DNA of 64,000 nucleotides from Macrostomum hystrix (taxonomy: Eukaryota > Animalia > Platyhelminthes): positions 4,030,001-4,094,000 of the forward strand of contig CATNEN010000003.1 of assembly GCA_950097015.1 (NCBI GenBank), written 5' to 3'. Numbering within the stretch: position 1 is the stretch's first letter; each line of letters opens with the position of its first letter. Shown in pieces: positions 166 through 55,555 of this stretch. The notes under the pieces were generated by a model. The model searched no databases. It had not been told where the DNA came from and saw only the letters and a program-made list of their open reading frames with translations. The position numbers were made by a program, and so were the translations under genes.

Positions 166-3100
166 ATGGAAAATATAATACGAAAAGGTCATCAATTAGA
201 AGGACAAATACTACTAATTTGCTTCGTTGGCCTCGCCTTCTTCTGGTAAGAAAATAGTTTGGACATTTGTTTTCAACTTCTCTTTCAAACTAAGTAACTT
301 CAATTTCGTCTGCGAGACCGGCCTGCCCAAGTTATAGCAAATCAATTTCACAAAATGAAACTTCTTTTTTGTCTTGCATTATATTCACCCGGCTTCAAAC
401 ATTATTATATGCCATGATGGGCCTGTACTTTCAATATATATTTTGGACGTCTCAGGCAAGACACCCAAGTGGGAGACAAACAACAAAAGTAGCGCGTATT
501 GTCACTCCAATAAGATTGGAGCTTCAAGAGCGGCTGGATGTGAAAGTTTCTGCGCAATCCAATTACGAGTAGCTGTATTTTTTATTGTGATTCTGTGCTA
601 TAGGGTCATAAATGCACAGGGCTTTAAATCTCTCGACACTCGACAGAATTATTATAATTGCATTGCGGCGGAGTCAGTGGCGGCGTCGGCGAAGATCAAG
701 GGCAAGGATAAAATCCGTATTTGTCAAAGCGGACCAAACACAAATAGCTGTGCTGAAGAGACGAAACACAAGTTACTAACGCCAGCCGGAAAGCCACCGG
801 GCGAAATTGAAGTTACTAAGTTTGAATTAGAAGTTGAAAACCAAAATTTTAAGCACTCTGACTAAGAGACTAGATTTGTTATTATTTATTTAGCAGTCGC
901 TCTCTAAATTTAAACTGTTTAACAGGATGCAAACTTTCATCTGTAATCTCCTACTTTAGGTTTAGGTTCATTCACTCGCTTACTGCAGTGTGTACTTTGA
1001 TTTATTTGATGCTAAAATGAAGGACTAAATGAATGGTCATTATTGACAATAAGAATGTGAATTAGACTTTAACAACCAGAAAACTAACCATAGTTAGAGG
1101 AAGGGGTCCCCATCACAAATTGTGATCCTCAAGACTGCGGTAAACATGGTATTAAACTTTGAAGTTGAAACTCGTGCTTTGCAGAGCAGAAGTTCATCTT
1201 TCTTCTTCTTTCAGTCAATGCTGCTAGCCATTTAGCAGTCAGCAATTAATTAACTACAGTTACGTGTCTTCCACAGAGTACCACCACCCCCTGTGCATTA
1301 CAGCTTTGATTAAATTTTCTTACACTATTAAGTCAGTCGCCAAATGAAGTGCGCGCTTGTGCCTTAGCGAGTAAATAGTGCGCTCTTGCGCATATGTCTG
1401 ACAGCGCGCTTATGCCACAGCGTGTCAAAAGTGCGCGCCTCTGCCAGTGCGCGCATGTGCCGCTGCGCGCTTATGAAGCGTTAATCCCGGTATTGGGTCA
1501 GTTTTTTTACCCCGATCCCGGGATTTGGGAAGCCCTAAAGACAATAATTACGACCGAGGCATGTAGCTTCGGCCACATGTTTTGTTAGGCAAGCGGCGAG
1601 ATTAAATATGCCATCCAGAGCCCGATTTGCCACGTAGCGTAATTTTATTAAAAGCGAATAGATGGTCTGTCCTATCTTCGTATCATTTTTTCTCCCCAGA
1701 TTTTTTCTGTTTTTTAACATCTCTGAAAAGTTTTAGAATCGAGGCGGCGAACCACTACTGCATCCACGACAGCATGAAGGTCTTCTCCATGAACGCTGAC
1801 TCGGACCAGACAGAGACACTGTTGACGAGCCACGGAGATATGGAGCTCCACGTGCCGCGGCAGCGCTGCTTGTGGGACGTGAATATCAACCGCATGACGG
1901 AGCCGCTGCAGCTGGTGCTGAGTCTGCGCCGAGGCCGACTGTGGCAGGAGGCAGCGAACGCGACCGGCTGCCCGTCGGAGCTGAGTGTGGCTCTGCAGGG
2001 TGAGCGGACTGTTGCAGGACTGTGTCCTTCACCATTGAATGAGCAAATCAGTCACGCAAAGCAGATCCCTCCTCACTCCAGGATCTGGATTCCACCGAGA
2101 GTGGAGAGACGGCTCATCGTTACCGAAGGCCCCTCTGATTGTGCCAGTGTATGAAAGGTGAGCTCGATACTCTGAGTGTTTCTAGAATATCCAATTCGCA
2201 CACGAGAGATTCGCGAGTCATTGAGAATGCACCGAACTGGCTGCAGCTCGCAGCAGCTCATCGTCAGGTTCTCGACCGGAGATCTCCAGCCTGAGGCGGT
2301 CTGCGGTCGCATCGAGCTGACCATCGGCGTCGCCAAGAAGGGATACTGCGGCAGGAACATGCTGCTGCATCGACATCGCTGCCTCTTTGTCTCCGACGAG
2401 AAGCTAGAGCTGCCAGACCTGACTGGGACTGGAGCAGAGCTCGCTAGCATCTCCGGCATTGAGCAGCTGCGAGACCTTCTGAGCGACAGTGAGAGCTGAG
2501 TCGCAGCCTGTTTGTTCTTTCCTTCTGTCAGTTGAAAAGCCATATGTAGTCAATTTGCGACGCGATCATTTTAGATGAGAAGCGGAGAGCAAAGCACCCG
2601 TACAAAGCCCCTCTGAACCTGAGGGGCTCCACCAGAGTGGGGATTTTCCGCTGCACTGGCTCTAACTGGACATTTTACCTGAACTCCAGCAGCGATGGGT
2701 GTGCGGCGGCGCCGTTCGTTCAGGAAGGACAGAAAGGCCAGCAGAACTCCAGGTCTGTGAATATAGCACCGAGAGTCGCATTGCTGAGAAAGGGGAACTA
2801 TACCCCTTCCGCTTCTTTTACCTGCAATTCGAGGAGAAATTCCACAAGATTCCAGGAAATATCCCTTTTTAAGAGAAAGTGTGGAGAGGTTACAGATAGG
2901 TTTGCTTAATTAGGTGATCCGTTTTTAGTTGTTTCCACGTTAAAATGATCCTTAGTGAGATGTACAGTTCAGGTGTGTACTTTTATACTTATTGTGATGT
3001 CTTGCAATTCAAAAGCTTCATCAGCAGTAGAACTCACAAAAGGGGAGTTTCCCACAGAACGGGGCAACGCTAGCACGCGACACTCAAAGCTTTGCCAGCC

Positions 3101-3823
3101 TTCAATCTTTATCAGCACGTCACCCGAATGTGCCTGCATCATCTCCGACTTTTGTTGGTCACCGACCTTTATCTTGACGGAGCTGCTGGGCCTTCAACAA
3201 GTAATAGTTGACTTTAGGCCAATCAGCGAAAGTATAAAAAAGCTTTAGGGACTCCACAGCAAGCTGCATGCTGACGGTGCTGACGACATTGGGCTGGTGA
3301 CTGATTTATTGACATACTAGGCGAGGGTCCTGTGATTGAGCTTGGTCCCATATTGAGGCCTGATCATCGAGATGGGAGAAATTTGCATCAGGGTGTCCAT
3401 ATTCGGCTGGTGCCACTTGTTGAATAACCTTGGTCCCCTTGGTACAAAAACGGGCGGTGAAATGGCTTGTAGTCCTACTGTTAAAATTACTTTTTCATCC
3501 ATTCTATTTACAGAGAAAAGTCTACTGAGTTTATGTGCGCATCTATGAAGATAATTTCTGATAGCATTCATGAGCTGATGTTCTTAAACTGCAGCAGTTC
3601 AGCCAGATGTCTGCTCGGCTTTGACGAGACTCCCAGGCCCACACGGAGCGCCGCTATCGATGGCGAAAGTTCCAGGTGCAATGAAGCGCTTCAGGCAGCC
3701 TGTCGGTTTGAGAAATCGGGCAGTATAGTATTTCCAAAGGTACTTCTAATAGCCACACTGTCTTTTTTAATTGTTATAGTTATAGTAGCTGTATTTTTCG
3801 CGGTGCAAAAGTGGAAATTTTAG
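166..3823 (+). CDS. CUB-like/CTLD-like type I membrane protein, paralogue 1 (last exon type A, nearly tail-less)
   Basis: Manual splice model: exons 166-245 (hydrophobic ILLICFVGLAFF, GTAAGA donor; least certain exon), 1731-1999, 2082-2157, 2247-2488, 2575-2752, 3514-3823. All introns GT-AG, phases 2,1,2,1,2; open 384-aa product. CUB-like motifs: YC..., RCLWDVNI, LQLVLSL, GCPSELSV, QLIVRFST. CTLD-like motifs: CGRNMLLHRHRCLFVS, GAELASISG, RVGIF, CASM, LMFLNCSS. TM VLLIATLSFLIVIVIVAVFFAV, then QKWKF-stop. Confidence 0.75.
1345..1540. mobile_element. Possible DNA transposon termini (GCGCGC-rich subterminal repeats; hAT-like end)
   Basis: Repeated TGCGCGCTTGTGCC-like units ending at ...GTTAATCC, followed by CCCGATCCCGGGATTTGGGAAGCCCTA (reverse strand TAGGG...). 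No partner ends found. Confidence 0.3.
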
Positions 3824-4389
3824 CTGAAATGTGTTCAATGAGATTTAAATTATTCTTCTGAAAATGTGGTAGCCATGCACCAGGTAGCTATGCAGCACAG
3901 GTGTGCTCATGATGAGGCCCAAGCACTTGAGACTGAACCATTGACTTAATTTAAGATTTATTTTGACACATTTGCATCGAATTAATGGACTTGTCGAACA
4001 TAACAAATTTCTAAAGCGATAATGCAATTCATTTGAGATAATACCCTGAGATTAACCAATTTACTTCTTACTTTGTTGACCGCCCGCCCATGCCTGCGCG
4101 TGTGGGGTGGCTGATTTTATTGATTTATTTTGCACTGCATACATCCACCCCGCCCCCAGTGTTATCTCTCTCTTTCTCACTCAACCCTCTATTATTATAT
4201 GCGTGCAGTACATGTACATGCTCCCTCACCCTGTCAGTTTAATGTTATTAAAATATAAAGTCTGCGAACTGCAGCATGAGTCATCTGTTTTGCTGAGTCA
4301 ACAGCTAATTTCACAACACGTCTATTTTTTTGTTGACGTATCGAAAATTATGTTCATGAGTAGTTGGACCCCAAAAGCCAAGGAGCGCA

Positions 4390-6112: not shown

Positions 6113-6156
6113 CATATATAAAATAAAACGAGCGATTCATATATATATATATAATA

Positions 6157-6692
6157 TCTAGAGAGACTATTTGAGAATCTAGAGAGACTAATTGAGGATC
6201 TAGAGAGACTATTTGAGAATCTAGAGAGACTATTTGAGGATCTAGAGAGACTATTTGAGGATCTAGAGAGACTATTTGAGGATCTAGAGAGACAATTAGA
6301 GAATCTAGAGAGACTATTTGAGAATCTAGAGAGACTATTTGAGAATCTAGAGAGAGTATTTGAGGATCTAGTGAGACTATTTGAGAATCTAGAGAGACTA
6401 TTTGAGGATCTAGAGAGACTATTTGAGGATCTAGAGAGACTATTTTGAGAATCTAGAGAGACTATTTGAGAATCTAGAGAGACTATTTGAGAATCTAGAG
6501 AGACTATTTGAGGATCTAGAGAGACTATTTGAGAATCTAGAGAGACTATTTGAGAATCTAGAGAGACTATTTGAGAATCTAGAGAGACAATTTGAGAATC
6601 TAGAGAGACTATTTGAGAATCTAGAGAGACTATTTGAGGATCTAGAGAGACAATTTGAGGATCTAGAGAGACAATTTGAGGATCTAGAGAGA
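6157..6692. repeat. 21-bp minisatellite (GA[A/G]TCTAGAGAGACTATTTGA)
   Basis: About 25 tandem units directly beside the mariner end. Confidence 0.95.
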
Positions 6693-9893: not shown

Positions 9894-10221
9894 AACCACT
9901 AAAGTTAAAATTAGGTCAGTCAGTCAATCAACTACAGCCTATCAATACATCTAGGCCCAAGCTGTGATCTGCACGTGAAGATCTCAAAGTCAAAATATCT
10001 GCGTTCAAAAAAAATTTCAGAGATTCTCCATGCTTCTCTGGCTAAGAATGAAGATTTCAAGCCTTCAGCAGAACCATCTCCTAGCATTGGCCAGGAAGCC
10101 AAGCCGAAAGTGAGCATTGCTGACGTGTATCCACGACTGATCAGGTCAACCCGCGCTTTCCCACCAATTGCTGGGCCTTGCTTGCTCAACTGGAAGTGAA
10201 AGTTCAGTTTCAACTGCGGAT

Positions 10222-15720: not shown

Positions 15721-17537
15721 GCTGACCACTATCAATAAATAATATTTAATACAACACATAAAGTTAGGGCACTCTTATTTAGAAGAGCATTCTACGGCTC
15801 GTATAGCAAGGGGCCCAGGACTGTAATAAGATTGTTCTAATTAATCTTGGATAACCAGGACTGTTCTAGATCATTTTCTCAACCCTATCCGCGCACATAT
15901 ATTTGCTTCTCGATTCACATACACTAAGGTATGACAGGGAATGCTATGCATATTGGCTTCAGTACGTGTTTCCAAATCTATTTTCCAGCTGTATGTACAC
16001 GTATGCGCATGTAAAGGTTTTATTCAGTCCTTGCTGTACAATGCTTCAGTGCAAAGTCAGCGCTTCTGCTTAAAAGTTCCGCGTTGGGAGAAGAAGGAAC
16101 TACAAAATCCAAGAAGAACAATGGATTTTGGACCGAAATTCGCAACAACTCATGATTAACATCGCCAGAAAATTTGCAAAATAAAAGAAACTTCAGGCAA
16201 GCCTCCATGACTAAGCAACTCAAAAAGCTGCAAGTTGCATGCGTACTTTTTGCAGCAATGTCATCACTATTCTCGTAAGTTCCACTTTGGAAAAACTTTG
16301 GAAATACAGCTTCAAGTAACTATTACTGCAAATTACAAGTCGTTGTCCATAAAGTATCAGTAGAAGACAAAGGATCGACTCACTGCCTGTCTGCTCACTG
16401 AAACCCATGTTCAAACGAATGGTATTCAAAATAAAGTACAAGCATGAGTTCTGGAAGCAATGTGTAAGATTTTAGCATCACAAAATGCAAAATGTGCAGA
16501 ATCGAGGCGGCGAACCACTTCTGCATACACGACAGCACGAAGGCCTTCTCCATGAACGCTGACACGGACCAGACTGAGACACTGTTGACCAGCCACGGAG
16601 ATATGGAGCTCCACGTGCCGCGGCAGCGCTGCTTGTGGGAGGTGATGATCCACCGCATGACGGAGCCGCTGCAGCTGGTGCTGAGTCTGCGCCGAGGCCG
16701 ACTGTGGCAGGAGGCAGCGAACGCGACCGGCTGCCCGTGGGAGCTGAGTGTGGCTCTGTAGGGTGAGCGGACTGTTGCACGACTGTGTCCTTCACCATTG
16801 AATGAGCAAATCAGTCACGCAAAGCAGATCCCTCCTCACTCCAGGATCTGGATTCCACAGAGAGTGGAGAGACGGCTCATCGTTACCGAAGGCCCCTCTG
16901 ATTGTGCCAGTGTATGAAAGGTGAGCTCGATACTCTGAGTGTTTCTAGAATATCCAGTCGCACACGAGAGATTCGCGAGTCATTGAGAATGCACCGAACT
17001 GGCTGCAGCTCGCAGCAGCTCATCGTCAGGTTCTCGACCGGAGATCTCCAGTCTGAGGCGGTCTGCGGTCGCATCGAACTGACCATCGGCGTCGCCAAGA
17101 AGGGATACTGCGGCAGGAACATGCTGCTGCATCGACATCGCTGCCTCTTTGTCTCCGACGAGAAGCTAAAGCTGTCAGACCTGACTGGGACTGGAGCAGA
17201 GCTCGCTAGCATGTCCGGCATTGAGCAGCTGCGAGACCTTCTGAGCGACAGTGAGAGCTGAGTCGCAGCCTGTTTGTTCTTTCCTTCTGTCAGTTGAAAA
17301 GCCACATAGTCGATTTGCGACGCGATCATTTTAGATGAGAAGCGGAGAGCAAAGCACCCGTTCATCGCTCCCCTGGACCTGAGGGGCTCCACCAGAGTGG
17401 GGATTTTCCGCTGCACTGGCTCTAACTGGACATTTTACCTGAACTCCAGCAGCAATGGTTGTGCGGCGGCGCCGTTCTTTCAGGAAGGACAGGAAGGCCA
17501 GCAGAACTCCAGGTCTGTGAATATAGCACCAAGAGAC

Positions 17538-18082
17538 GTGTTGTGTCTCGAGGGGCCAACTCAATTCGGTCCAGTAGGGGAAGTTGGGGCCACCCCCCTG
17601 GAGACAACGAGGTCTTCCAGCCACATGGCGACACAGGAGAACTTCTAATTCGCGGCTGAGTGGAACCGGGGAAGCGCGCGGGGAAGAGAGGAACGAGGAG
17701 AGAGAGAGAGAAGGAGAGATGCAAGAGGCCAGAGGGATGAGGTGGGTGAACAGGGTGAGCACAGAAAGAGAATACAGAGCTCTGCTTCCAGCCAGCTGCT
17801 CTGACCACGCAAAACACAAGGCGAATCACTAGGGTTAGTCGCTGTCTCACCGCACAGCTCGCGGCCCGTCAATCTGACAGGGCCGGTCTCTGTCCAGGGT
17901 TTATTGCAGGAGGCCGCACAAGGATTTACCAGCGGGGCCGCCGGAGTCACGCGGCACGCAGACAGGCAGAACGCGGAAGCGCAGGGACGCGGAACGCAGA
18001 AAACGCGAAAACGCTACGTTAGGGAAGAGGAAAAAACTCGAGTCGGGAAAAGGGGAAACTTCGGCGTCGCTCCGCCGACAAC
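17538..18082. mobile_element. LTR-like insertion in intron 5 of paralogue 2
   Basis: GC-rich block starting TGTTGTG and ending ACAACA, beginning where similarity to paralogues 1 and 3 stops. No TSD seen. Confidence 0.4.
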
Positions 18083-19345: not shown

Positions 19346-19349
19346 CGTT

Positions 19350-19920: not shown

Positions 19921-20474
19921 AGCCTATGTGCAAAAAGATGTGGCAAATGTATGTAAGAAAGCGGCGGTCGAACAAATCGGATCATTATGTTTTGAAGGGG
20001 GTTAATTTTTTTGCGAGTGTCATTGCCGTGCTAAGCAGAGCCCCGTCACCTCCAGGGTCGAGTCCCCAGGTGCAAAGTGCGGCTTCCTGCAACAATTGAT
20101 CATCGGACGGCCTGTCCTGACTTTCGCAGACTGCGTCATGCCAGCTAGATTGCTGCTCACCTTCGACGAGACACCCAGAGCTGATTGGAGCAGAACGAGT
20201 TCAGTCTGCCCGGAAACAAGTCTGCTTGAGACCAGCTGTGAATCGAAACAGCAAGACACACCCATGTGGATTTTCGTACTGTCGGTGTCATTTGTTCTCT
20301 TTTTATTGGTCCTTATTATTTCGTTAATTGTTTTACGACTCAAACGTTCTCATAGTACACGAGCTCCTGAGCAGAGGTGTGCAGAGGCATCTAGAGATAG
20401 TGAAGGCCGGAATTTAGAATATATTTCCGTTTCCCCTTCTGAGCCAGCATGCTCACCGAATCCAGCAGACACAC

Positions 20475-20720
20475 AATCTGCTGAAACCAAGAATCGATCG
20501 AAACGCAGATTCTTCCAAAACGCAGAATCTGCTGAAACCCAGAATCGGTCGAAATGCAGATTCCGCTAAAAGTTTGAATCTGCTGAAACCTAGAATCTGT
20601 CGAAATGCTGATTCCGCTAAAAGGCAGAATATACTGAAACCCAGAATCGGTCGACATGCAGATTCCACTAAAAGGCAGAATTTTCTGTAACACAAAATCT
20701 GCTGAAACGCAGAATCAGCC
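20475..20720 (+). repeat. 51-bp tandem repeat overlapping the tail-coding region and 3' UTR of paralogue 2
   Basis: AATCTGCTGAAACC-like starts at 20475, 20526, 20577 and 20628. Confidence 0.8.
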
Positions 20721-21159
20721 GAAATGTACGTAGACTTCACTAAAATGCATAAACAGCTGACACAAGGTATCCAGTATTGAAAAGTAGAATCGGAGTAGAA
20801 AGTGTTGGGTTCCGCATAAACGTAGAATGCACGGAAATTCACACGTGATTGTGAAAATGATTATTTTACCCAGCAGTAACCAATTCTTACCCATGTGACA
20901 GACTCACTCGTTGGCAAAATACCTTTCTACATCAAAAGCTTTTGCCTTTAGTTTTTGTCTGTCTCTTTTTTACGAGCGATTATAGATTGGGCTAGTTCTT
21001 CAATATACGGGATTACATGCTTACCTCGTTTTGTATTTCTTTGACTCTACGCAATATCCCTATTTTTTCTAACGAATTCGCACCCGATTTCTTGGCCATC
21101 AAATTTCTCGCTTCATCACACAGACTCTGGATGGGTTTGCAACCCAGTCATTGCAGCTT

Positions 21160-24932: not shown

Positions 24933-25457
24933 CTCACGCTAACAGCATAGACATGTAAAAAAACATGTATGGACATGTAACAGCAGTTCAGTACATGGAC
25001 TGTAGGTAGGCAGATACATGCCGAGATGTCTACCTCAGCTGTTTAAGGAGCTTAAACAGCTGAAACAATCCATAAGAACAATGGATTTTGGACCGAAATT
25101 CGCAACAACTCATGATTAACATCGCCAGAAAACTTGCAAAATAAAAGAAACTTCAGGCAAGCCTCCATGACTAAGCAACTCAAAAAGCTGCAAGTTGCAT
25201 GCGCACTTTTTGCAGCAATGTCATTACTTTTCTCGTAAGTTCCACTTTGGAAAAACTTTGGAAATACAGCTTCAAGTAACTATTACTGCAAATTACAAGT
25301 CGTTGTCCATAAAGAATCAGTAGAAGACAAAGGATCGACTCACTGACTGTCTGCTCACTGAAACCCATGTTCAAACGAATCCTCAATGAAAATAAAGTAC
25401 AAGCATGAGTTCTGGTGGCAATGTGTAAGAGTTAAGCAAAAAAATGTAAAGTTGCAG

Positions 25458-27837
25458 AATCGATGCGGTTAACCACTACTGCGTCCTGGACAGCACGAAG
25501 GTCTTCTCCATGAACGCTGACACCGAACAGACTGAGACACTGTTGACCAGCCACGGAGATATGGAGCTCCACGTGCCGCGGCAGCGCTGCTTGTGGGACG
25601 TGAAGATCCACCGCATGACGGAGCCGCTGCAGCTGGTGCTGAGTCTGCGCCGAGGCCGACTGTGGCAGGAGGCAGCGAACGGGACCGGCTGCCCGTCGGA
25701 GCTGAGTGTGGCTCTGCAGGGTGAGCGGACTGTTGCACGACTGTGTCCTTCACCATTGAATGAGCAAATCAGTCACGCAAAGCAGATCCCTCCTCACTCC
25801 AGGATCTGGATTCCACCGAGAGTGGAGAGACGGCTCATCGTTACCGAAGGCCCCTCTGATTGTGCCAGTGTATGAAAGGTGAGCTCGATACTCTGAGTGT
25901 TTCTAGAATATCCAGTCGCACACGAGAGATTCGCGAGTCATTGAGAATGCACCGAACTGGCTGCAGCTCGCAGCAGCTCATCGTCAGGTTCTCGACCGGA
26001 GATCTCCAGCCTGAGGCGGTCTGCGGTCGCATCGAGCTGACCATCGGCGTCGCCAAGAAGGGATTCTGCGGCAGGAACATGCTGCTGTATCGACATCGCT
26101 GCCACTTTATCTCCGACGAGAAGCTGGAGCTGTCAGACCTGACTGGGACTGGAGCTGAACTCGCTGGCATCTCCGGCATTGAGCAGCTGCGAGACCTTCT
26201 GAGCGACAGTGAGAGCTGAGTCGCAGCCTGTTTGTTCTTTCCTTCTGTCAGTTGAAAAGCCACATAGTCGATTTGCGACGCGATCATTTTAGATGAGAAG
26301 CGGAGAGCAAAGCACCCGTACAAAGCCCCTCTGGACCTGAGGGGCTCCACCAGAGTGGGGATTTTCCGCTGCACTGGCTCTAACTGGACATTTTACCTGA
26401 ACTCCAGCAGCGATGGATGTGCGGCGGCGCCGTTCGTTCAGGAAGGACAGGTAGGCCAACAGAACTCCAGGTCTGTGAATATAGCACCGAGAGTCGCATT
26501 GCTGAGAAAGGGGAACTACCCCTTCCGCTTCTTATACCTGCAATTCGAGGAGAAATTCCAGAAGATTCCAGGACATACCACTTTACAAGAGAAAGTGTAG
26601 AGAGGGTACAGATAGGTTTGCTTAATCAGGTGCTCCGTTTTTTAGTTTTTTCCACGTTAAAATGATCCTTAGTGAGATGTACAGTTCAGGTTTGTACTTT
26701 AATACTTATTGTGATGTCCTGCAATTCAAAAGCTTCATCAACAGTAGAACTCACAAGAGGGGATCGAGTTTCCCACAGAACGGAGCAACGCTAGCACGCG
26801 ACACTCTTAGAAATGTTTGTTGCGCGTCTTCTGAAACAAGAATCAAGTCACCAGTCCTTCAGACCGTCGAAATATTCAACGGTTCTGGCCCATGGTTGAA
26901 TTTTTCCAAAAGAGCTAGTGTATTCATACACCCTGTACATGAAATAGCTTTTCCAGCCTTCAAACTTTATCAGCACGTCACCCGAATGTGCCTGCATCAT
27001 CTCCGACTTTTGTTGGTCACCGACGACGACCTTTATCTTGACGGAGCTGCTGGGCCTTCAACAAGTAATAGTTGACTTTAGGCCAATCACCGAAAGTATA
27101 AAAATGCCACAGCCAGCTGCTGACGATACTGACGGCATCGGGCTGGTGACTGATTTATTGACAGTCTAGGCGAGAGTCCTGTGATTGAGCTTCGTCCCAT
27201 ATTGAGGCCTGATCATCGAGATGGGAGAAATTTGCATCAGGGTGTCCATATTCGGCTGGTGCCACTTGTTGAATAACCTTGGTCCCCTTGGTACAAAAAC
27301 GGGCGGTGAAATGGCTTGTAGTCCTACTGTTAAAATTACTTTTTCATCCATTCCATTTACAGAGAAAAGTCTACTGAGTTTATGTGCGCATCTATGAAGA
27401 TAATTTCTGATAGCATTCATGAGCTGATGTTCTTAAACTGCAGCAGTTCAGCCAGATGTCTGCTCGGCTTTGACGAGACTCCCACGCCCACACGGAGCGC
27501 CGCTATCGATGGCGAAAGTTCCAGGTGCAATGAAGCGCTTCAGGCAGCCTGTCGGTTTGAGAAATCAGCTGATCAGATCACTACCTGTGCAGAAAGTTTG
27601 CTCAGTAATCAGGGCAGTAAAGTATTTCAAATGGTACTTATAATACCCCCATTTTTAATTGTTATTTTTTTGTTGCGAACGAAGCAATGCTTAGCAGAAA
27701 TGTGTAAGAGACAAGGACCTGCGCAATCGGATCAAAATTATTCTACTAAAAATGTGGTAGCTATGCACCAGGTAGCTATGCGGCACAGGTGTGCTCATGA
27801 TGAGGCCCAAGCCTTTGATACTAAACCATTGAGTTAA
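25458..27837 (+). CDS. Paralogue 3 (last exon type A, long tail); first exon not resolved
   Basis: Exons 25458-25720, 25803-25878, 25967-26208, 26293-26470, 27363-27837; all GT-AG and open. TM VFQMVLIIPPFLIVIFLL followed by a tail of about 53 aa. Confidence 0.75.
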
Positions 27838-34301: not shown

Positions 34302-34822
34302 CCAGCTTTTTGATGTGCAGTGGCATCGTCCACCCACCCCTCCGCTTTAGCCAATGTGAAATTATTGTCAAACAATTAGTGCGATAAGCCAGACAGGCTG
34401 GTAAAGTGTGTTTTGTCGGTTTGAGATCTCTAGAGCTCACTTTTGAGCACCAATAAATTGACTAGCCGTCGATCTTTTCGTTGTTGCTACTGTACAACCG
34501 TGATCACAGTACCTGACCGGCGGTCTTCTCACTCGCATTGGAATCAATCTGCTCTCGATGATCCCTGCGAACCGTCAGATCTTAGCCTCGGTGATCCAGA
34601 ACACGTCTCAGCGGCCCCTGCTGAGCAGTTCCTTCACCACCGACTCGCTTCGTAGTCAGGGCCTCTTTCAGAAAGTTCCCACAACTCCCAGAGGATTCTC
34701 GAAGTCTGCCTCTGACTTGTGCACTCCGCGTGAATTAGCTGAATATAAAATACAAGTCCAACGTTGTCAAAGTGTCACGAAAATCACACTAACAAAATAA
34801 ATTGAAAACTATTGTGAACAAG

Positions 34823-37800
34823 GATCGAGGCTGCGAACCACTACTGCATCCACGACAGCATGAAGGCCTTCTCCATGAACGCTGACACGGAACAGGCTGA
34901 GACACTGTTGACCAGCCACGGAGATATGGAGCTCCACGTGCCGCGGCAGCGCTGCTTGTGGGATGTGAAGATCCACCGCATGACGGAGCCGCTGCAGCTG
35001 GTGCTGAGCCTGCGCCGAGGCCGACTGTGGCAGGAGGCAGCGAACGGGACCGGTTGCCCGTCGGAGCTGAGTGTGGCTCTGCAGGGTAAGCGGACTGTTG
35101 CAGGACTGTGTCCTTCACCATTGATTGAGCAAATCAGTCACGCAAAGCAGATCCCTCCTCACTCCAGGATCTGGATTCCACAGAGAGTGGAGAGACGGCT
35201 CATCGTTACCGAAGGCCCCTCTGATTGTGCCAGTGAATGAAAGGTGAGCTCGATACTCTGAGTGTTTCTAGAATATCCAGTCGCACACGAGAGATTCGCG
35301 AGTCATTGAGAATGCACCGAACTGGCTGCAGCTCGCAGCAGCTCATCGTCAGGTTCTCGACCGGAGATCTCCAGCCTGAGGCGGTCTGCGGTCGCATCGA
35401 ACTGACCATCGGCGTCGCCAAGAAGGGATTCTGCGGCAGGAACATGCTGCTGCATCGACGTCGCTGCCACTTTATCTCCGACGAGAAGCTGGAGCTGTCA
35501 GACCTGACTGGGACTGGAGCAGAGCTCGCTAGCATCTCCGGCATTGAGCAGCTGCGAGACCTTCTGAGCGACAGTGAGAGCTGAGTCGCAGCCTGTTTGT
35601 TCTTTCCTTCTGTCAGTTAAAAAGCCACATAGTCGATATGCGACGCGATCATTTTAGATGAAAAGCGGAGAGCAAAGTACCCGCCCAAAGCCCCTCTGGA
35701 CCTGACGGGCTCTACCAGAGTGGGGATTTTCCGCTGCACTGGCTCTAACTGGACATTTTACCTGAACTCCAGCAGCGAAGGGTGTGCGGCGGCGCCATTT
35801 GGTTTAACAAAAAATGTCACAATTTTGGAGAACAGGTCTGTGTAAAGTTTGATGTTCAGTGATATTTTTTTCAAATCGATGGGCACTGCAGCAATAACAG
35901 TAGAATAGTATCATGACGAACTTCTACTTAAAACGGAGTTAAAGTTTGTGCTGCAACAGCGTGTGATTGCTATGTCAATTAGAGCTTTTCGACTGTGCTA
36001 ATTATTTGAAAAATTTCTGCCTACTTAGACATTGGTAAGTTGAAAGCAATCGTGGTAATGCGTGCTGCGTTTTCGATTACACTGAACTGTAGTCACTGCA
36101 CTGGAGTCACTGCACTGAAGTCACTGCACTGTAGTAACTGCACTGTAGTCACTGCACTGGAGTCACTGCACTGGAGTCACTGCACTGGAGTCACTGCACT
36201 GGAGTCACTGCACTGGAGTCACTGCACTGTAGTCACTGCACTGTAGTAACTGCACTGTAGTCACTGCACTGGAGTCACTGCACTGTAGTCACTGCACTGG
36301 AGTCACTGCACTGTAGTAACTGCACTGTAGTCACTGCACTGTAGTAACTGCACTGGAGTCACTGCACTGTAGTAACTGCACTGTAGTAACTGCACTGTAG
36401 TCACTGCACTGTAGTCACTGCACTGGAGTCAGGACGGGGAAGCTTCTAGGCCACATCTGCTCTGGATTATAAAATATTGGCTATATAAAAAATTCCAGCC
36501 GTCTCTCAGGCCACACGCACCTTCGCCAGATTATTGAATACACACCCCGACCAGATACGAGGTAAATGGGTATCGCCCTTTCTTTCAAGTCATTCAATAA
36601 AGTCTCAATGTCTCCTTTTAAGTTCCTGTAAGCTGAAAAACCCTAAGTCATGTCATGTTAACTGACCAACAACGTTAAGGGCCAGTGCCAACAACAGCGG
36701 TCTATTTATTAGGGACAGACTTGTCTATGGAAGTACTTATGCCTCGGTGGTGAGTAAACATTGTAGTACGATAAAAAGCGGTCTTTCGCGTCCCTGGGAT
36801 TTCCCTAGGGTAATCCAAAAAATTGGTTAAACTCAAATTGTCTATAGTCGTTAAGCTATAATATTGAAAACAGAGTTGTATTTAGAACAACTAACGGGTG
36901 TCCCAAAAAAGGGTAACACTTTGTGCGCTCACTGTGAGTGAGCAGTTAGGCCTATAGCCCAGTAATTTAACAGGTCTACAGTAAACATATGTAAGTTTTT
37001 CCCACAAAAATTTGGTTACGAAAAATTGCTCTAGAGGCGAGTTATTGAGCACAGAAGTGTACGCTAGCTTTTCTGCCAAGCTTTGCCTACACAGCTGCCA
37101 TAGACAATATTTTGCTTAAAAAATCTTAAGGAGCATGGACAACGAACTTGGCCGGAATCGAAGCGGTGCCGGGTCGAGTCCGCAGCCAGATCGAGTCGCC
37201 CACCTGCTCGGTCATGGTCAGCGGATGGCGGAGGCGGCGGCCCCACATGAGCTGGTCCGGAGAGTCCGAGCGGTTCCCGCTGGGCCTGCTGGTGCGAATA
37301 GTCAGGAGAAGCTTCTGCAGAAATTGGTCGAATGGCACCACCTTGGTCCACGTCTTCAACCCGCCTTTCAGACTTCTCACCAGCCGCTCAGCCTGTCCGT
37401 TAGACTGCGGATAATAGGGCGGGGTGTGTACCTCCTGGCACCCGACGCTGCTCAACCACTGCGACACTCTCTCCGACTTGAACTCCGGAGCATTGTCCGA
37501 CACCAGCGTCCGCGGCACTCCGTTCCGGGCGAACACCGCCCTCAGCACCCGCAGCACCGAACCCGCAGACCTGTCAGGAACCTGAATCGCTTCCGGCCAG
37601 CCCGAGTACGCATCAGACATTAGCAGCAGCAGACCCACCCCGGGCACCTCGCAGCGGTCCATGTGCACTCGGGACCATGGTTCACTCTCTGGTGGCCAAC
37701 AGTCCATCTTCCTCTGAGCAACTGGCCGCCTCTCTGAGCACAGCTGGCACCGCTCAACAAACTGACGCACCTCGCGGTCCAATCTAGGCCACCAGAACTC

Positions 37801-40800: not shown

Positions 40801-42111
40801 GTCTATGGAAGTACTTATGCCTCGGTGGTGAGTAAACACTGCTAGAGAGAGAGAGACAGCACACGAGGGATAGGAAGAAAGATATCATAGAATGTAACGA
40901 GGTCTAAACATAAAAGTGCAACCACAAAACCAACAGTTCCCTAAAATAATCATGCGTCGATTCCCATTAATTCCCTAAATTCCCTGAAGCCAGCTTGACC
41001 CGACCGAGACTCGAAGTCAGAGCGAATTCAAACCTCCCAGGAAAATTAAACTGAAAATTGAAAAATCTGAAAAATTTAAAAAGAGTAGAGGGTTCAACGG
41101 TGTAGTTCAGAAATCCCTGAAGAATTTCGGGAAACCGTGTCCGTGACGACACAAAAACGATGTCGCATAGAAAACGATAACAATCAGACGAGACCGAGAA
41201 GTACCCTGGACAAAACCGCTACGAGACAACGACAACACATAAATCGAGCCTTCGCAGTAAGAGCCAGTCTTTACGGCACTGAACGAATAGAAACGGCAGC
41301 CAGAAGCCCCATTATTGGCCTAGAAAAAATGTATTAACTAAAAGATAAGTAAGGGCCCGAGGGGGTAAGAGCTAAATAAAAGAGGCGAAGAAAGAGAGAC
41401 GAACAGCTAGCCAATCAGAGACGAGGGAGAGGAAAGAGAAGTAAGGGTTAACTAAGATATAGAACAGATAGACGGAGAGAGGAGAAAGTACAATAAGAGG
41501 GCACGCGGCGTAAACAAACACAGAAAGAAGCGGAACTTTATATTAGTCTGTTAATAATAATTAGTAAGCAGGCGACGGTGTAAAAACATCAGTCTGCTAA
41601 TATTAGTAAGCAGGCGACGGTGTAAAAACATCCGTCTGCTAAAAGCAGAGCCCCTGTCACTTCCAGGGTCGAGTCCACAGGTGCAAAGTGTGGCTTCCTG
41701 CAACAGTTGATCATCGGACAGCCTGTCCTGACTTTCGCAGACTGCGTCATGCCAGCTAGATTTCTGCTCAGCTTCGACGAGACACCCAGAGCTGATTGGA
41801 GCAGAACGAGTTCAGTCTGCCCGGAAACAAGTCTGCTTGAGACCAGCTGTGAATTGAAACAGCAAGACACACCCATGTGGATTTTCGTACTGTCGGTGTC
41901 ATTTGTTCTCATTTTATTGGTCCTTATTATTTCGTTAATTGTTTTACGACTCAAACGTTCTCATAGTACACGAGCTCCTGAGCAGAGGCGTGCAGAGGCA
42001 TCTAGAGATAGTGAAGGCCGGAATTTAGAATATATTTCCGTTTCCCCTTCTGAGCCAGAATGCCACCGAATCCAGCAGACACACAATCTGCTGAAACCTA
42101 GAATCGGTTGA
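34823..42111 (+). CDS. Paralogue 4 (last exon type B, ITIM-consensus tail) with a 5.8-kb TE-filled intron 5; first exon not resolved
   Basis: Exons 34823-35085, 35168-35243, 35332-35573, 35658-35835, 41667-42111; frame open across all junctions. LEYISV at 42025-42042. Confidence 0.72.
36090..36431. repeat. 14-bp minisatellite (GTCACTGCACTG[G/T]A)
   Basis: About 24 units in intron 5 of paralogue 4. Confidence 0.93.
36627..40838 (-). mobile_element. Gypsy/Ty3 LTR retrotransposon (Mag-like), defective
   Basis: 134-bp TGT...ACA LTR copies at 36627-36760 and 40705-40838 (4 mismatches). PBS-like TGGCGTTGCAAGCAGGATT next to the 5' LTR. Gag with twin Zn knuckles (CQRCG...CHKCGKQGHFSRVC), protease DSGAS, RT YQDD, RNase H (NYSNIEREALA, TDHEPL), integrase HHCC and SDNAPEF/NGQAER. 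Order PR-RT-RH-IN; several stops and frameshifts. Confidence 0.95.
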
Positions 42112-44790: not shown

Positions 44791-45030
44791 TGAGAGATAC
44801 AATTCAGACTACTGACAACAGTAGAAAAGCAAAGACTGGCTGCAAAACTCTCACATAACACTAAAAAATATCGCCATGGAAAATGGCAAGGTAAAAAGAG
44901 ACTTCTGAGCACACTAAAAGTGGTGGGAGACGACGGCGTGTGGCTATGGCTGACTGACGAAGGCAAAAAAGCCAGAAACCGGTCTCGGTCTGCCAGCGCG
45001 AGGTTCGTTCCCCACTTTTAGTGTGTTACA
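44791..45030. repeat. 240-bp TG...CA repeat, copy 1 (LTR-like)
   Basis: Direct repeat of 49201-49440; contains internal inverted repeat CACACTAAAAGTGG...CCACTTTTAGTGTG. Confidence 0.7.
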
Positions 45031-45049
45031 GAGCTGATATGAATTAAGA

Positions 45050-45790: not shown

Positions 45791-46179
45791 AGATGCATAT
45801 TATCCATGTACATTTTTACTAAATGTACACCGTGCCTAAATATACTGCTGGATTGTCTAAAGTACATATTTAATGCAGCGATAGAATTCATCAAAACAAA
45901 GAAACATTTGGTCTTCAGCTGCTGCTTGATATTCTTTATATTTTTAGAAAGTAAGCTGGTATGAATTGAGAAGTCTCTCTAAACGGTGGCTGTACTCATA
46001 AATCTCGCTCTTCTTTCGTCCCAATTTTGTCTCTCTGACAAGGTACGAAAAATTTTATACTTAATTCGAATATGAAATCCCTAAATAGAATGGGAAAATA
46101 ATAGAAATATTGTGCGGTGACGCTTATACAACGCGATAGTGCATGCAAAGTGCAAGAACTATTTCGCTTTGATCTCAAA

Positions 46180-48882
46180 ATGAATATTTTGCGCCACATG
46201 GCAGTAAATTTCCTTCTTGGTAAGCAGCCCAGAAAAGCAGCATTTCTGATTAATATTTTGCAAGCTACTTAATTTGTTATTTTGACTTCTTCGCTCTGTG
46301 CATGCTGCACTGGGTACAAACGGAGGTACTCAGGCACAGATGGCGAAAATGGCTCAAGCCTATTGCTGAGTGAGTCGGACTCATGACTTGAAGACCTGGG
46401 GTTCGATTCGCGACTCTACTAGAAAAAATTTGTGTCCAGTTAGGAAGACACTTAAATGTGCATTAATTTAGTTCACTCGGCTGCTACAAAGGTATACCAG
46501 CTTGCCAAATATTTGTTCATCCAATTTTGCACTTAAACTCTGAGTACACATGTAGGTGACGGTGCCTATTTTTAGAAAAATAGTGGTGCAGTGAAAAAGA
46601 TGCTTACTTAAAGCTTCTCAGCACTACTGCAAGGGAAAGTAATTAATGTGCGAGACCATCTCAATCTGGAACTTCAGCACTTTGTGTGCATCTCTCGCGT
46701 AGGGGCAGCGTATATATATATAGACATTAGCATCAGCAACTAACCCCCACCCCAAGATTGACGGCACATAGAAGGTTTGCGGCAGACAGTAAACCCAGCA
46801 GCCAATCTAAAGGGGCCAAGTGCGCTTGCACTCTAGGCGGCACGCATGCGGAACACATCCGAGCGTACTATAGCCATTATAATGTACAATCCTAACAATA
46901 ATAGTATCTATTATTATAAAGTAATTATTATGACTATTTTATCATTCGAAAACAGCTAAATATGGTACAATTGTACAACTGTGAACTGTACACGAACAGA
47001 GTTTGACGCAAATTATAATTGCGTGGATTGTCTGCAAAAAGTTTCAACTGGGACACTAGTTTATGGCGAAAACAATTACACTGGTGCTATACTGTATTCT
47101 GAGACGCTTGCAGCCTCTTTCTGCTGATTAAACATCAAGGAGCTGTTTGCACTATTTGATGTACCTGAACCGAAATTACAGCCACAAATACCAGTTTTTA
47201 TCTTTGAAACTAAAGACGATGCTGCCGACAATTACAGAACTACAATAAATATAGTACGTTCTGTCTACACACTTGCAAAAAGTTTAGATCAATTTCGTGA
47301 AAATGCTCACCACATTTCCTTCAGTGAAATTGGACCTCGCTCAAGTGGCGCAACTTGCTCATTAACTGCAGGCATGCTACAGACTCGACTGCTGATTGTT
47401 ACGTTATTCGTTTCTCAATCCGAGGCTGCGAACCACTACTGCATCCAGGACAGCACGAAGGTCTTCTCCATGAACGCTGACTCAGACCAGACTGAGACAC
47501 TGTTGACCAGCCACAGAGATATGGAGCTCCACGTGCCACGGCAGCGCTGCTTCTGGGAGGTGATGCTCCGCCGCATGACGGAGCCGCTGCAGCTGGTGCT
47601 GAGCCTGCGCCGAGGCCGACTGTGGCAGGAGGCAGCGAACGGGACCGGCTGCCCGTCGGAGCTGAGTGTGGCTCTGCAGGGTGAGCGGACTGTTGCACGA
47701 CTATGTCCTTCACCATTGAATGAGCAAATCAGTCACGCAAAGCAGATCCCTCCTCACTCCAGGATCTGGATTCCACAGAGAGTGGAGAGACGGCTCATCG
47801 TTACCGAAGGCCCCTCTGATTGTGCCAGTGTATGAAAGGTGAGCTCGATACTCTCAGTGTTTCTAGAATATCAAGTCGCACACGAGAGATTCGCGAGTCA
47901 TTGAGAATGCACCGAACTGGCTGCAGCTCGCAGCAGCTCATCGTCAGGTTCTCGACCGGAGATCTCCAGCCTGAGGCGGTCTGCGGTCGCATCGAGCTGA
48001 CCATCGGCGTCGCCAAGAAGGGATTCTGCGGCAGGAACATGCTGCTGCATCGACGTCGCTGCCACTTTATCTCCGACGAGAAGCTGGAGCTGTCAGACCT
48101 GACTGGGACTGGAGCTGAGCTCGCTGGCATCTCCGGCATTGAGCAGCTGCGAGACCTTCTGAGCGACAGTGAGAGCTGAGTCATTGACTTTTGTGAGATT
48201 GCCTAAAGTGATTGAAGCAAACTCAGTCCTGATGTTTTCTGTGACCAAATCATTTTAGATGAGCAGAGAAAATTAGAATATCCTTACAAAGAGCCTCTTG
48301 ACCTGAGCAACATCCCTCTGAGAGTTGGGGTGTTTGAATGCGCCAGCTCTGGCATCCTGGAATTTGGGAACTTCGGCAGTGGCTCCTGCATGATGCTACC
48401 GTTCAACTCAACGGGATTTTACTTGGCAAAAAGTACTAAAAGTGTGGAAGCCAGGTAAAACTTTGCTAGTCGGTGCAGTGAATTATTCTGTTTAGTGGAC
48501 TTTTCGCACACAATAAACAGATAGTGTTTGCATCTCCATTGCATCTTTAATGAACAGCAGCATAAAAGCTCCAAGTTTCAAGCGCCAATGCGGTGTTTTG
48601 CGGCTTGCTCAGAGTGGAAAGCGTCTGTTGGAACTGGGCCATTGTGGAATCAAGGTGCGGTCACTACTGTGCTTCAGTGAAGTCCCGGTAATTTTAGACA
48701 ATAGCAATGGGGTCTCGTGTGGGATCTGTTCAGTTTTATCCAATGAGGTGACCACGGATGGAAAAGCAGCAAAGATCATTTTGTCGATTGTTATAACATT
48801 GACTCTTGTTATATTGTTTGTTTTTTGGCGTTCTGGCCGTTACAATAAGTTACGCCGAAATATCGCGTTTAAACGCTTGTGA
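46180..48882 (+). CDS. Paralogue 5 (last exon type C)
   Basis: Exons 46180-46219 (tentative; ATG 47374 could be the start instead), 47372-47680 (contains signal-like MLQTRLLIVTLFVSQSEA), 47763-47838, 47927-48168, 48259-48454, 48558-48882; 395 aa open. TM IILSIVITLTLVILFVFW; tail RSGRYNKLRRNIAFKRL. Confidence 0.8.
46340..46506 (+). mobile_element. tRNA-derived SINE, family 2
   Basis: TGGCTCAAG (A-box-like), GGGTTCGATTC (B box), then GTGTCC...AAGACACTTAA and TTTAGTTCACTCGGCTG...GGTATACCAG. Confidence 0.6.
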
Positions 48883-55545: not shown

Positions 55546-55555
55546 TGTAGCACAG

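What the first reader, a model, noticed from the sequence alone, without database searches (positions are those of the whole stretch)
1731..48882. Constant cassette joined to variable last exons: gene-conversion architecture
Seen: copies 1-5 are near-identical, introns 2-3 included, from the first codons of exon 2, while their upstream flanks mostly differ. Identity stops abruptly at a different point in each copy: about 48182 (copy 5, start of intron 4), about 35797 (copy 4, inside exon 5) and about 17530 (copy 2, start of intron 5). Beyond that lie three last-exon types (A: copies 1,3; B: 2,4; C: 5) that align only at the motif level (C...C....LL.F.E.P). Established: the C-terminal half of a CTLD carries its usual ligand-binding loops. 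Inference: old paralogues are repeatedly overwritten at the 5' end while the binding half, TM helix and tail stay diverse.
Basis: partly seen in the sequence, partly recalled or inferred. Interest (0 to 1): 0.85.

Follow-up and report, generated by a model that had tools for sequence, protein, structure and literature searches.

The report
Gene-conversion mosaic in flatworm receptor cluster
Eight neighbouring genes of a Macrostomum flatworm (almost certainly M. hystrix) encode a genus-specific membrane protein; in six of them the front ~0.8-1 kb, introns included, has been copied between genes and kept ~96% identical while their back ends stay anciently different: a clean but ordinary case of partial gene conversion.

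Summary
Five + strand copies in the window, plus a sixth 6 kb upstream, share a cassette (exon 2 to exon 4/5, introns included) at 95-97% identity. It starts at the same point in every copy. It ends at 48182 (c5), 35799 (c4) and 17538 (c2). c1 and c3 stay alike to about 4034. Beyond the ends lie last-exon types A, B and C, only 22-36% alike as protein. Two further paralogues (c6, c7) were never homogenised.

The gene-conversion reading is supported on five counts:
- Patches are bounded on both sides.
- c0 keeps an unconverted island.
- Only 8 of 19 shared variants fit any single tree.
- The cassette tree contradicts the last-exon types.
- Silent-site GC is 0.72-0.86 in the cassette and 0.45-0.56 outside.

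In M. lignano, exon 4 is independently homogenised (AU p=0.019). RNA contigs confirm all c5 introns and join the cassette to c5's own 3' exons. DNA contigs bridge both c5 cassette edges.

Corrections: the cluster has eight genes, not five. c2 has an in-frame stop. The 'CTLD' label is unproven: Pfam is negative, AlphaFold confidence is low, and the best PDB hit is a CTLD at only E=0.11. No long recent tracts were found.

This is a known kind of process in a new, lineage-specific family.

The parts
1737..2778 (+). Copy 1 cassette. Exon 2 1737-1999, exon 3 2082-2157, exon 4 2247-2488, exon 5 2575-2752. Homology with c3 continues to 3085 and, at 84%, to 4034.
   Evidence: Exon borders transferred from the RNA-confirmed c5 borders. 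The 1-nt insertion at about 2194 is intronic.
3514..3823 (+). Copy 1 last exon, type A: ectodomain end, TM helix, 8-aa tail.
16498..17538 (+). Copy 2 cassette. Exons 16500-16762, 16845-16920, 17009-17250, 17335-17512. In-frame TAG at 16759-16761, so probably a pseudogene. Shares about 1.4 kb upstream (16106 onward) with c3.
20056..20569 (+). Copy 2 last exon, type B: TM plus a 78-aa tail with an ITIM-like LEYISV motif. 94-96% identical to c4's over 20033-20835.
25445..26806 (+). Copy 3 cassette and the continuing homology with c1. Exons 25458-25720, 25803-25878, 25967-26208, 26293-26470.
27363..27837 (+). Copy 3 last exon, type A. A 45-nt insertion and indels before and within the TM give a degenerate TM and a read-through tail.
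34821..35799 (+). Copy 4 cassette. Exons 34823-35085, 35168-35243, 35332-35573, 35658-35835. Identity stops inside exon 5 at 35799.
41667..42111 (+). Copy 4 last exon, type B. It is reached across a 5.8-kb intron 5 that holds an LTR retrotransposon (36627-40841, minus strand).
46103..46219 (+). Copy 5 exon 1: 5'UTR and the start of the signal peptide. The 5' end is a minimum, set by the length of the RNA contig overhang.
   Evidence: (loose ends before 47371)
47372..48882 (+). Copy 5 exons 2 to last. Exon 2 47372-47680, exon 3 47763-47838, exon 4 47927-48168, own exon 5 48259-48454, own last exon type C 48558-48882. The cassette patch is 47416-48182 only. The gene is expressed and spliced.
   Evidence: GT..AG joints in runs X2, X4, X5; error-free DNA contigs 46400-47477 and 48153-49248 in X1
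52923..54383 (+). Copy 6: unhomogenised old paralogue with the same five-exon layout. Exon 4 is 55-58% aa and exon 2 23% aa identical to the cassette.
59731..61138 (+). Copy 7: unhomogenised old paralogue. Exon 4 is 68-70% aa (81% nt) and exon 2 25-31% aa identical to the cassette.

Best explanation
The locus is a tandem cluster of eight genes (c0 just upstream of the window, c1-c7 inside it). They belong to a Macrostomum-restricted family of type I membrane proteins. The layout is signal peptide, a CUB-like N-terminal module, a compact and possibly C-type-lectin-like module, a TM helix and a variable tail. The genome is almost certainly M. hystrix.

The paralogues are old. Their last exons, c5's exon 5, and the whole of c6 and c7 differ as much from one another as from M. 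lignano genes.

In c0-c5, ectopic (interlocus) gene conversion between neighbours has pasted one version of exons 2-4/5, with the small introns between them, over each gene's own version. This most likely happened through double-strand-break repair that used a misaligned paralogue as template. Unequal crossover and segmental duplication contributed as well.

Each acceptor has its own 3' tract end. The common 5' end is where alignable homology begins, because intron 1 and exon 1 are unrelated between copies. Later short exchanges shuffled variants among the cassettes and raised their GC content through biased repair.

Shown: the mosaic, its boundaries, reticulation, tree incongruence, GC bias, expression and splicing of c5, and the correctness of c5's junctions.

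Inferred: the repair mechanism, the direction of transfer, and any selective benefit of keeping a common N-terminal module on diverse C-terminal, TM and tail modules.
For: 1. Boundaries and identity including introns.
2. c5 is a 767-bp patch flanked on both sides by its own sequence. It has its own exon 1, its own part of the signal peptide, and an exon 5 only 33-40% aa identical to the other copies. Identity drops from about 97% to about 55% inside a collinear intron 4.
3. c0 keeps its own intron 2, exon 3 and intron 3 (c1 coordinates 2040-2233) between two converted patches.
4. The family occurs only in this cluster, plus one very distant locus on another contig, so the diverse 3' ends must be the paralogues' own.
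5. There are 19-20 informative sites showing 9 of the 10 possible 2|3 splits, and 111 of 190 site pairs are incompatible. Any single tree explains at most 8 of 19. Independent hits would give 1-3.6 (P(>=20) about 0).
6. The cassette tree is star-like and follows array position. The AU test rejects {c1,c3} (p=0.036) although these two share last-exon type A.
7. GC3 is 0.72-0.86 in cassette exons and 0.45-0.56 in last exons, c5's exon 5 and the exon 2 of c6/c7. Cassette introns are 0.44-0.52 GC against 0.33-0.39 elsewhere.
8. On the exon 2 tree the cassette groups with M. lignano P0005/P0006 (99/97). On the exon 4 tree all M. lignano paralogues fall together (99/99), and the AU test rejects the exon 2 grouping (p=0.019). 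Those M. lignano paralogues are 95-100% alike in exon 4 but only 23-36% alike in exon 2, exon 5 and the last exon.
9. Selection cannot explain the identity: introns are included and dN/dS is 0.4-0.8.
10. RNA contigs from 3 samples in 2 studies confirm introns 2-5 of c5 and link the cassette to c5-specific exons. DNA contigs bridge both cassette edges without mismatch, and word depth rises from about 78 to 334-1238 inside the cassette.
Against: - A GENECONV-style permutation test finds no significantly long identical tracts between any pair inside the cassette. PHI is only marginal (p=0.03 at the nearest-neighbour scale and not significant at wider scales). The data therefore fit an older burst followed by short exchanges better than frequent recent long conversions.
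- Shared flanks (c0/c1, c2/c3, c1/c3, c2/c4) show that duplication or unequal crossover produced part of the pattern, so not every copy need be an independent conversion.
- Synonymous divergence in cassette exons (5-10%) exceeds intron divergence (1.4-2.2%), which a simple uniform homogenisation model does not predict.
- Read-level support was obtained only for c5. The other junctions rest on the assembly alone, apart from one c4 5'-junction overhang in run X1.
Confidence: 0.8

Rival explanations
1. Recent serial duplication by unequal crossover only (birth-and-death without conversion). One young gene was duplicated several times, and hybrid genes arose from single crossovers inside the cassette.
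For: Shared flanks fit hybrid products of unequal crossover. c3 has c2-like upstream and c1-like downstream sequence, c0/c1 share both sides, and c2/c4 share the last-exon region. The cassettes are roughly equidistant and star-like, and no long recent tracts are seen.
Against: A crossover hybrid shares one whole flank with each parent. c5 and c4 share neither flank with any copy, so they are two-ended patches. The island inside c0 needs two separate tracts. The diverged but homologous 3' exons (22-45% aa) cannot have arisen within the time that gave 4% cassette divergence. No other family members exist that could have donated them.
Confidence: 0.1
2. Assembly or polishing artefact. The identical cassettes arise from consensus bleeding or collapse of a repeat in a long-read assembly.
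For: The genome is a PacBio plus Illumina assembly (PMC10468722). Multi-copy segments are the places where polishing errors occur. Only c5 was checked against reads.
Against: - Independent short-read contigs bridge both c5 edges with 0 mismatches.
- RNA contigs from two studies reproduce the c5-specific cassette variants (47371-47600 with 0 mismatches; exons 2-4 with 1 mismatch in 433 nt) and the cassette-to-unique-exon splice joints.
- Word depth in the cassette is 4-16 times that of the flanks, as expected for real multiple copies.
- A c4-specific upstream overhang is seen at the cassette start (all).
- The copies differ at about 4% of sites, with copy-specific singletons.
Confidence: 0.04
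3. Strong purifying selection on the 5' half of ordinarily diverging paralogues, with no DNA-level homogenisation.
For: Exon 4 is the best-conserved exon family-wide: 55-74% aa even to c6, c7 and M. lignano.
Against: Introns 2-4 are even more alike (1.4-2.2% divergence) than the exons. dN/dS is 0.4-0.8. Identity ends in the middle of an exon and in the middle of introns.
Confidence: 0.01
4. The cassette is cargo of a mobile element (transduction or Pack-type capture) inserted in front of different 3' exons.
For: The 5' edge is shared, and the spacers are full of transposons and minisatellites.
Against: - The 3' ends differ in every copy.
- No terminal repeats or target-site duplications flank the cassette in the alignment.
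- The 5' edge coincides with the start of alignable coding homology.
- The cassette occurs nowhere else in 220 Mb.
Confidence: 0.03

Closest known systems
Partial-gene concerted evolution by interlocus gene conversion in tandem receptor families, for example the primate paired receptors Siglec-5/14 and Siglec-11/16, and KIR/LILR (from my own knowledge, not tested here)
   Same: The 5' (N-terminal, extracellular) exons and the intervening introns are kept near-identical between neighbouring paralogues. TM and cytoplasmic parts stay different. Tract ends are abrupt and copy-specific. Phylogenies differ between gene segments.
   Different: The protein family is a different, genus-restricted one (CUB-like plus possibly lectin-like, no Ig domains). 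Six copies are involved rather than pairs. The boundary falls inside the putative binding domain rather than after it. No opposing activating and inhibitory tails have been shown.
Classical concerted evolution of tandem duplicates with GC-biased gene conversion, for example globin, histone and other multigene families (general knowledge)
   Same: Within-species similarity exceeds between-species similarity for the converted segment. Silent sites are GC-enriched in the converted part. Paralogues share variants in a reticulate pattern.
   Different: Only an internal segment of about 0.8-1 kb is homogenised. Two cluster members (c6, c7) escape entirely in this species, whereas in M. lignano the homogenised segment is centred on exon 4.
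Nematode CLEC proteins combining CUB and C-type lectin domains (nearest named ESM Atlas clusters)
   Same: A possible CUB plus CTLD domain combination in a secreted or membrane protein that is expanded in tandem clusters.
   Different: The similarity is only a language-model lead (0.79-0.81). Pfam CUB and Lectin_C do not match this family. The canonical WIGL and WND motifs and the C1-C4 cysteines are absent.

Membership tests
Interlocus gene conversion / concerted evolution | High identity extends through introns and silent sites, not only through constrained residues | tested here: met
   Introns 2-4 diverge by 1.4-2.2%, exons by 1.3-6.1%. dN/dS is 0.4-0.8.
Interlocus gene conversion / concerted evolution | Patches bounded on both sides, lying within otherwise diverged but homologous genes | tested here: met
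   The c5 patch is 47416-48182. The c4 patch is 34821-35799. c0 has two patches around an unconverted island.
Interlocus gene conversion / concerted evolution | Phylogenetic incongruence between converted and unconverted segments | tested here: met
   Exon 2 tree versus exon 4 tree, AU p=0.019. Cassette tree versus last-exon types, AU p=0.036 for {c1,c3}; {c2,c4} is not rejected, p=0.14.
Interlocus gene conversion / concerted evolution | Paralogues within a species more alike than orthologues between species in the converted segment | tested here: met
   Exon 4 is 90-99% identical within the window cassettes, 95-100% within M. lignano and 64-74% between species. Exon 2 types are shared across species. 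This is protein-level only for M. lignano.
Interlocus gene conversion / concerted evolution | Statistically long identical tracts between particular pairs (GENECONV-type signal) | tested here: not met
   No pair is significant (global p>=0.73). PHI p=0.03 only at nearest-neighbour scale. Reticulation is nevertheless strong.
Interlocus gene conversion / concerted evolution | GC enrichment of the converted segment (biased gene conversion) | tested here: met
   GC3 is 0.72-0.86 inside against 0.45-0.56 outside. Intron GC is 0.44-0.52 against 0.33-0.39.
C-type lectin-like domain (Pfam PF00059) | Significant match to the Lectin_C profile | tested here: not met
C-type lectin-like domain (Pfam PF00059) | CTLD fold (two helices, two sheets, long loop region) | tested here: inconclusive
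   AlphaFold2 models of P0004 and P0002 with fragment alignments have pLDDT 56 and 50, and Foldseek on them is meaningless. The family profile's best PDB hit is the CTLD of NKR-P1A, but at E=0.11. The nearest named Atlas clusters are all Lectin_C at 0.75-0.81.
C-type lectin-like domain (Pfam PF00059) | Conserved cysteine framework (C0-C0', C1-C4, C2-C3) and WIGL-type core motif | tested here: inconclusive
   C-x10-C-[LFY]-F-x-S (C0/C0') and C...C in the last exon (C2/C3-like) are present. The C1 and C4 positions are L and S in most copies. 'VGIF/VGVF' stands where WIGL would be. This is a reading by eye.
CUB domain (Pfam PF00431) | Significant match to the CUB profile | tested here: not met
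   Pfam is negative. UniProt names several M. lignano members 'CUB domain-containing protein'. Atlas leads include CUB plus Lectin_C clusters.
Paired activating/inhibitory receptors | Near-identical ectodomains joined to opposing signalling tails (ITIM versus a charged TM residue that recruits an adaptor) | tested here: inconclusive
   Type B tails carry an ITIM-like LEYISV motif. The other tails are 1-53 aa without such a motif, and no TM helix has a basic residue. Only part of the ectodomain is shared.

The most novel reading that the evidence does not exclude
The cluster is a flatworm recognition-receptor system built like vertebrate paired or NK-type receptors. Gene conversion is maintained by selection to keep a common N-terminal (CUB-like) module that engages one shared partner. 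The distal lectin-like loops, stalk, TM and tails (ITIM-like in type B, near-absent in others) are kept diverse for different ligands and signalling outputs. The same design evolved in parallel in M. lignano. This would be an independently evolved, conversion-maintained modular receptor family in a genus studied for sexual conflict and regeneration.
Probability: 0.1. Interest if true: 0.7.

Novelty: new member of a known kind. Interest (0 to 1): 0.4.

Why it matters
This is a tidy, well-bounded natural example of partial-gene concerted evolution. It has internal controls: two unconverted paralogues, an unconverted island, and a sister species showing the same process on a different tract. It also carries a clear GC-biased-conversion footprint, in a phylum where such processes are hardly documented. 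A full-text search for Macrostomum together with 'gene conversion' found no dedicated study among the titles and abstract openings listed; those papers were not read.

For annotators of Macrostomum genomes it flags three things: a genus-specific, expressed membrane-protein family; run-on or chimeric gene models in M. lignano (P0006, P0008, P0009); and the risk of mis-assigning RNA-seq reads among near-identical 5' halves.

It does not reveal a new mechanism.

Tried and rejected
- **Pfam.** Scans of single exons, of M. lignano homologues and of the distant paralogue L018 gave nothing.
- **ESM Atlas.** The search on exon 4 alone was uninformative.
- **First exon model.** I first placed the exon 4 acceptor at 2185/2186, which made c1 look frameshifted and c0 look stopped. 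Comparison with M. lignano proteins and the RNA joints moved it to 2246/2247, so both defects are intronic.
- **Alignment A2.** This fragment alignment on full-length P0007 misplaced the last-exon fragments and was discarded.
- **Fold predictions.** Two AlphaFold jobs (A3 on P0004, A4 on P0002) gave low confidence. Foldseek on the second gave only noise.
- **Tract tests.** The GENECONV-style tract test was not significant. PHI was significant only at the nearest-neighbour scale.
- **Genome scans.** Scans with PF00059 and PF00431 did not touch the cluster.
- **Earlier findings.** The search of earlier findings had nothing for this place.
- **Joined proteins.** The window's exons were never joined into a spliced protein for any search or fold. 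All window searches were exon by exon, by reference, and database proteins of M. lignano served as full-length proxies.
- **Not run.** Complex prediction was not used, since no binding claim is made.

Full report
**What is there**

The window is G000:C3:4030001-4094000 of a 220,453,370-base, 42-contig genome. That matches the published Macrostomum hystrix assembly ('~220 Mb ... 42 contigs', PMC10468722). The only sequence relatives among 1.84 billion protein representatives and 5.8 billion clustered proteins are nine M. lignano proteins.

Self-comparison shows five + strand copies of a roughly 1-kb segment starting at 1735, 16498, 25456, 34821 and 47416. A genome-wide DNA search adds a sixth copy (c0) about 6 kb upstream of the window and finds the segment nowhere else. 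Protein-level searches exon by exon show two more full paralogues in the window with a diverged 5' half: c6 at 52923-54383 and c7 at 59731-61138. No further members lie within 40 kb upstream or 20 kb downstream. One very distant locus lies on another contig.

**Gene model**

All eight genes share one layout:
- an upstream exon 1;
- exon 2 (263 nt in c1);
- exon 3 (76 nt);
- exon 4 (242 nt);
- exon 5 (about 178 nt);
- a last exon that encodes the end of the ectodomain, a TM helix and a tail of 1-78 residues.

I first put the exon 4 acceptor 60 nt too far upstream. M. lignano proteins (…PLVVPVTN|SSQLLTVRF…) and RNA joints corrected it to c1 2246/2247. The 1-nt insertion in c1 and the TGA in c0 are therefore intronic.

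Logan contigs of runs X2, X4 and X5 (three samples, two studies) are spliced. They show GT..AG joints at 47680/47763, 47838/47927, 48168/48259 and 48454/48558. They also carry an overhang that maps to 46191-46218, which is exon 1 of c5 and reads in frame into the signal peptide. These contigs join cassette exon 4 to c5's own exon 5 and last exon, so the chimera is transcribed.

c2 carries an in-frame TAG at 16759-16761. c3 has a 45-nt insertion and indels that degrade its TM helix. The other copies are open from exon 2 onward. I never joined the window's exons for any search or fold. Database proteins from M. lignano served as full-length proxies.

**The mosaic**

Sliding-window identity and the six-way alignment show that identity starts within about 3 nt of the exon 2 acceptor in c0-c4. 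It starts at the equivalent point in c5, where that point lies inside the exon, because c5's exon 2 begins 45 nt further upstream.

Identity is 97-100% in the core and 88-96% in the first 100 nt. The ends are:

| Copy | Identity ends at | Position in the gene |
|---|---|---|
| c5 | 48182 | 14 nt into intron 4 |
| c4 | 35799 | inside exon 5 |
| c2 | 17538 | 26 nt into intron 5 |
| c1/c3 | 4034/27922 | alike throughout, apart from indels |

c0 has two patches separated by its own intron 2, exon 3 and intron 3.

Past the edges the sequence is still homologous but old. c5's intron 4 is collinear with the others at about 55% identity. Its exon 5 is 33-40% identical as protein. Last-exon types A (c1, c3), B (c2, c4), C (c5), the c0 type, c6 and c7 are 22-41% identical to one another, which is no closer than to M. 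lignano last exons.

The flanks are mosaic too. c0/c1 and c2/c3 share upstream DNA, c1/c3 share downstream DNA, and c2/c4 share the last-exon region.

**Why gene conversion**

- Selection cannot give intron identity. Introns diverge by 1.4-2.2%, which is less than the exons, and dN/dS is 0.4-0.8.
- A single recent duplication series cannot give 3' exons this diverged. No other family members exist that could have donated them.
- c5 and c4 share neither flank with any copy, so they are two-ended patches and not crossover hybrids. c0's island needs two tracts.
- Among c1-c5, 19 biallelic informative sites show nine of the ten possible 2|3 splits. Any single tree explains at most 8 of them. Simulated independent hits give 1-3.6 such sites and never 20. 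Of 190 site pairs, 111 fail the four-gamete test.
- The cassette tree is star-like with weak structure by array position, {c0,c1,c2}|{c3,c4,c5}. It rejects {c1,c3}, the pair that shares last-exon type A (AU p=0.036).
- Silent-site GC is strikingly higher in the homogenised part. GC3 is 0.86, 0.76 and 0.72 in cassette exons 2, 4 and 5, against 0.45-0.56 in the last exons, c5's exon 5 and exon 2 of c6/c7. Cassette introns are 0.44-0.52 GC against 0.33-0.39 elsewhere. This is the footprint of GC-biased gene conversion.
- The process recurs in the sister species. On exon 2 the cassette groups with M. lignano P0005/P0006 (99/97), while P0003/7/9 form another old lineage. On exon 4 all M. lignano paralogues collapse together (99/99), and the AU test rejects the exon 2 grouping (p=0.019). 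Those M. lignano paralogues are 95-100% alike in exon 4 but 23-36% alike in exon 2, exon 5 and the last exon.

**Limits**

- A GENECONV-style permutation finds no significantly long pairwise tracts, and PHI is only marginal. The picture is one of older homogenisation plus short exchanges, not of visibly recent long events.
- Unequal crossover or duplication clearly contributed.
- Synonymous divergence in cassette exons exceeds intron divergence, and this remains unexplained.

**Assembly check**

In run X1 (DNA), error-free contigs span 46400-47477 and 48153-49248 and so cross both cassette edges of c5. Word depth rises from about 78 to 334-1238 within the cassette. An overhang identical to c4's upstream flank appears at the cassette start. 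RNA contigs reproduce c5-specific cassette variants.

**What the protein is**

Pfam finds neither CUB nor Lectin_C on the exons, on full-length homologues, or in a genome scan that detects more than 150 canonical examples of each elsewhere. Two AlphaFold2 models have pLDDT 56 and 50, with only the TM helix confident.

Three weak leads agree with one another:
- UniProt calls several homologues 'CUB domain-containing'.
- The family profile's best PDB match is the CTLD of NKR-P1A. It aligns C-x10-C-F-x-S…ELAxIS…EQL to the N-terminal half of that CTLD, at E=0.11.
- The nearest named ESM Atlas clusters are all Lectin_C, including nematode CUB+Lectin_C proteins, at 0.75-0.81.

I rate 'CUB-like + CTLD-like' at about 60-65%.

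**Comparison with known systems**

Mechanistically this is partial-gene concerted evolution, as described for tandem receptor families. The closest analogy, from my own knowledge, is the paired Siglecs and KIR/LILR, where conversion keeps N-terminal exons alike while TM and tails differ. Here the family is new and genus-restricted, six genes take part, and the tract ends inside the putative binding domain. Type B tails have an ITIM-like LEYISV motif, but no opposing activating features were found.

Earlier scan notes describe other receptor clusters with tyrosine-motif tails in this genome. I use them as context only and did not test them.

**Verdict**

The process is of a known kind in a new family, and the interest is moderate.

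Noticed in passing
window 16759-16761: c2 has an in-frame TAG at the last codon of exon 2 (CAG in all other copies). It is probably a pseudogene, yet it still carries a homogenised cassette.
   Followed up: partly
window 36627-40841 (- strand): An LTR retrotransposon sits inside c4's intron 5. Its gag (zinc knuckle), RT and integrase ORFs lie in separate frames, and it is flanked by 137-nt repeats that are 96% alike. It explains the 5.8-kb intron. Observed only.
   Followed up: partly
window 4801-5655 (- strand): A mariner-like transposase ORF of 284 aa (Pfam Transposase_1, HTH_48). It is truncated relative to a full DDE transposase.
   Followed up: partly
window 6023-6818, 7956-9900, 10140-11000, 19344-20000, 21062-22700, 52086-52866, 54903-55642, 59078-59778: Minisatellite arrays with 14- to 45-nt units fill the spacers and some introns. 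Two of them end immediately upstream of exon 2 of c6 and c7. They may promote misalignment and exchange in the cluster.
   Followed up: no
window 50168-50347: A decayed second copy of part of the type C last exon (41-58% aa, with stops) lies 1.3 kb downstream of c5.
   Followed up: no
window 49127-49400 and 44791-45030: A very high-copy repeat. Word depth in DNA run X1 reaches 68,000, against about 78 for unique sequence.
   Followed up: no
window 27580-27700 versus 3685-3830: c3 differs from c1 by a 45-nt insertion before the TM helix and by indels within it. The result is a proline-containing, weaker TM helix and an ORF that runs into what is 3'UTR in c1.
   Followed up: partly
window 20290-20400 and 41900-42010: The type B cytoplasmic tails (c2, c4) contain an ITIM-like motif, LEYISV. 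The other tails are 1-53 aa and lack it.
   Followed up: partly
L018 (G000:C25:9321745-9324948): A distant paralogue with the same exon order: a CUB-like ORF, then 'FCHMDMLFHRGSCYLIT…TFDEAARAA…', then 'KFWTGAYK…C.YM…DC'. A 'PDPQIGNASL' minisatellite-like ORF lies between the pieces. Pfam is negative.
   Followed up: partly
window 47680 -> 47924: RNA contigs of X4 and X5 show an additional joint that skips 243 nt (GT..TG, 'between: not known'). It could be an exon-3-less form or a contig of a paralogue. Unresolved.
   Followed up: no
cassette exons versus introns (c1 coordinates 1737-2752): Synonymous divergence among the cassettes (5-10%) is 2-5 times the divergence of the intervening introns (1.4-2.2%). 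This is unexplained. It might reflect exon-restricted input from more diverged donors, or hypermutable CpG sites.
   Followed up: partly
M. lignano proteins P0006, P0008, P0009: These database models look like run-on or chimeric predictions across adjacent family members (two ectodomain pieces in one protein). That suggests the family is tandemly arrayed in M. lignano as well.
   Followed up: no
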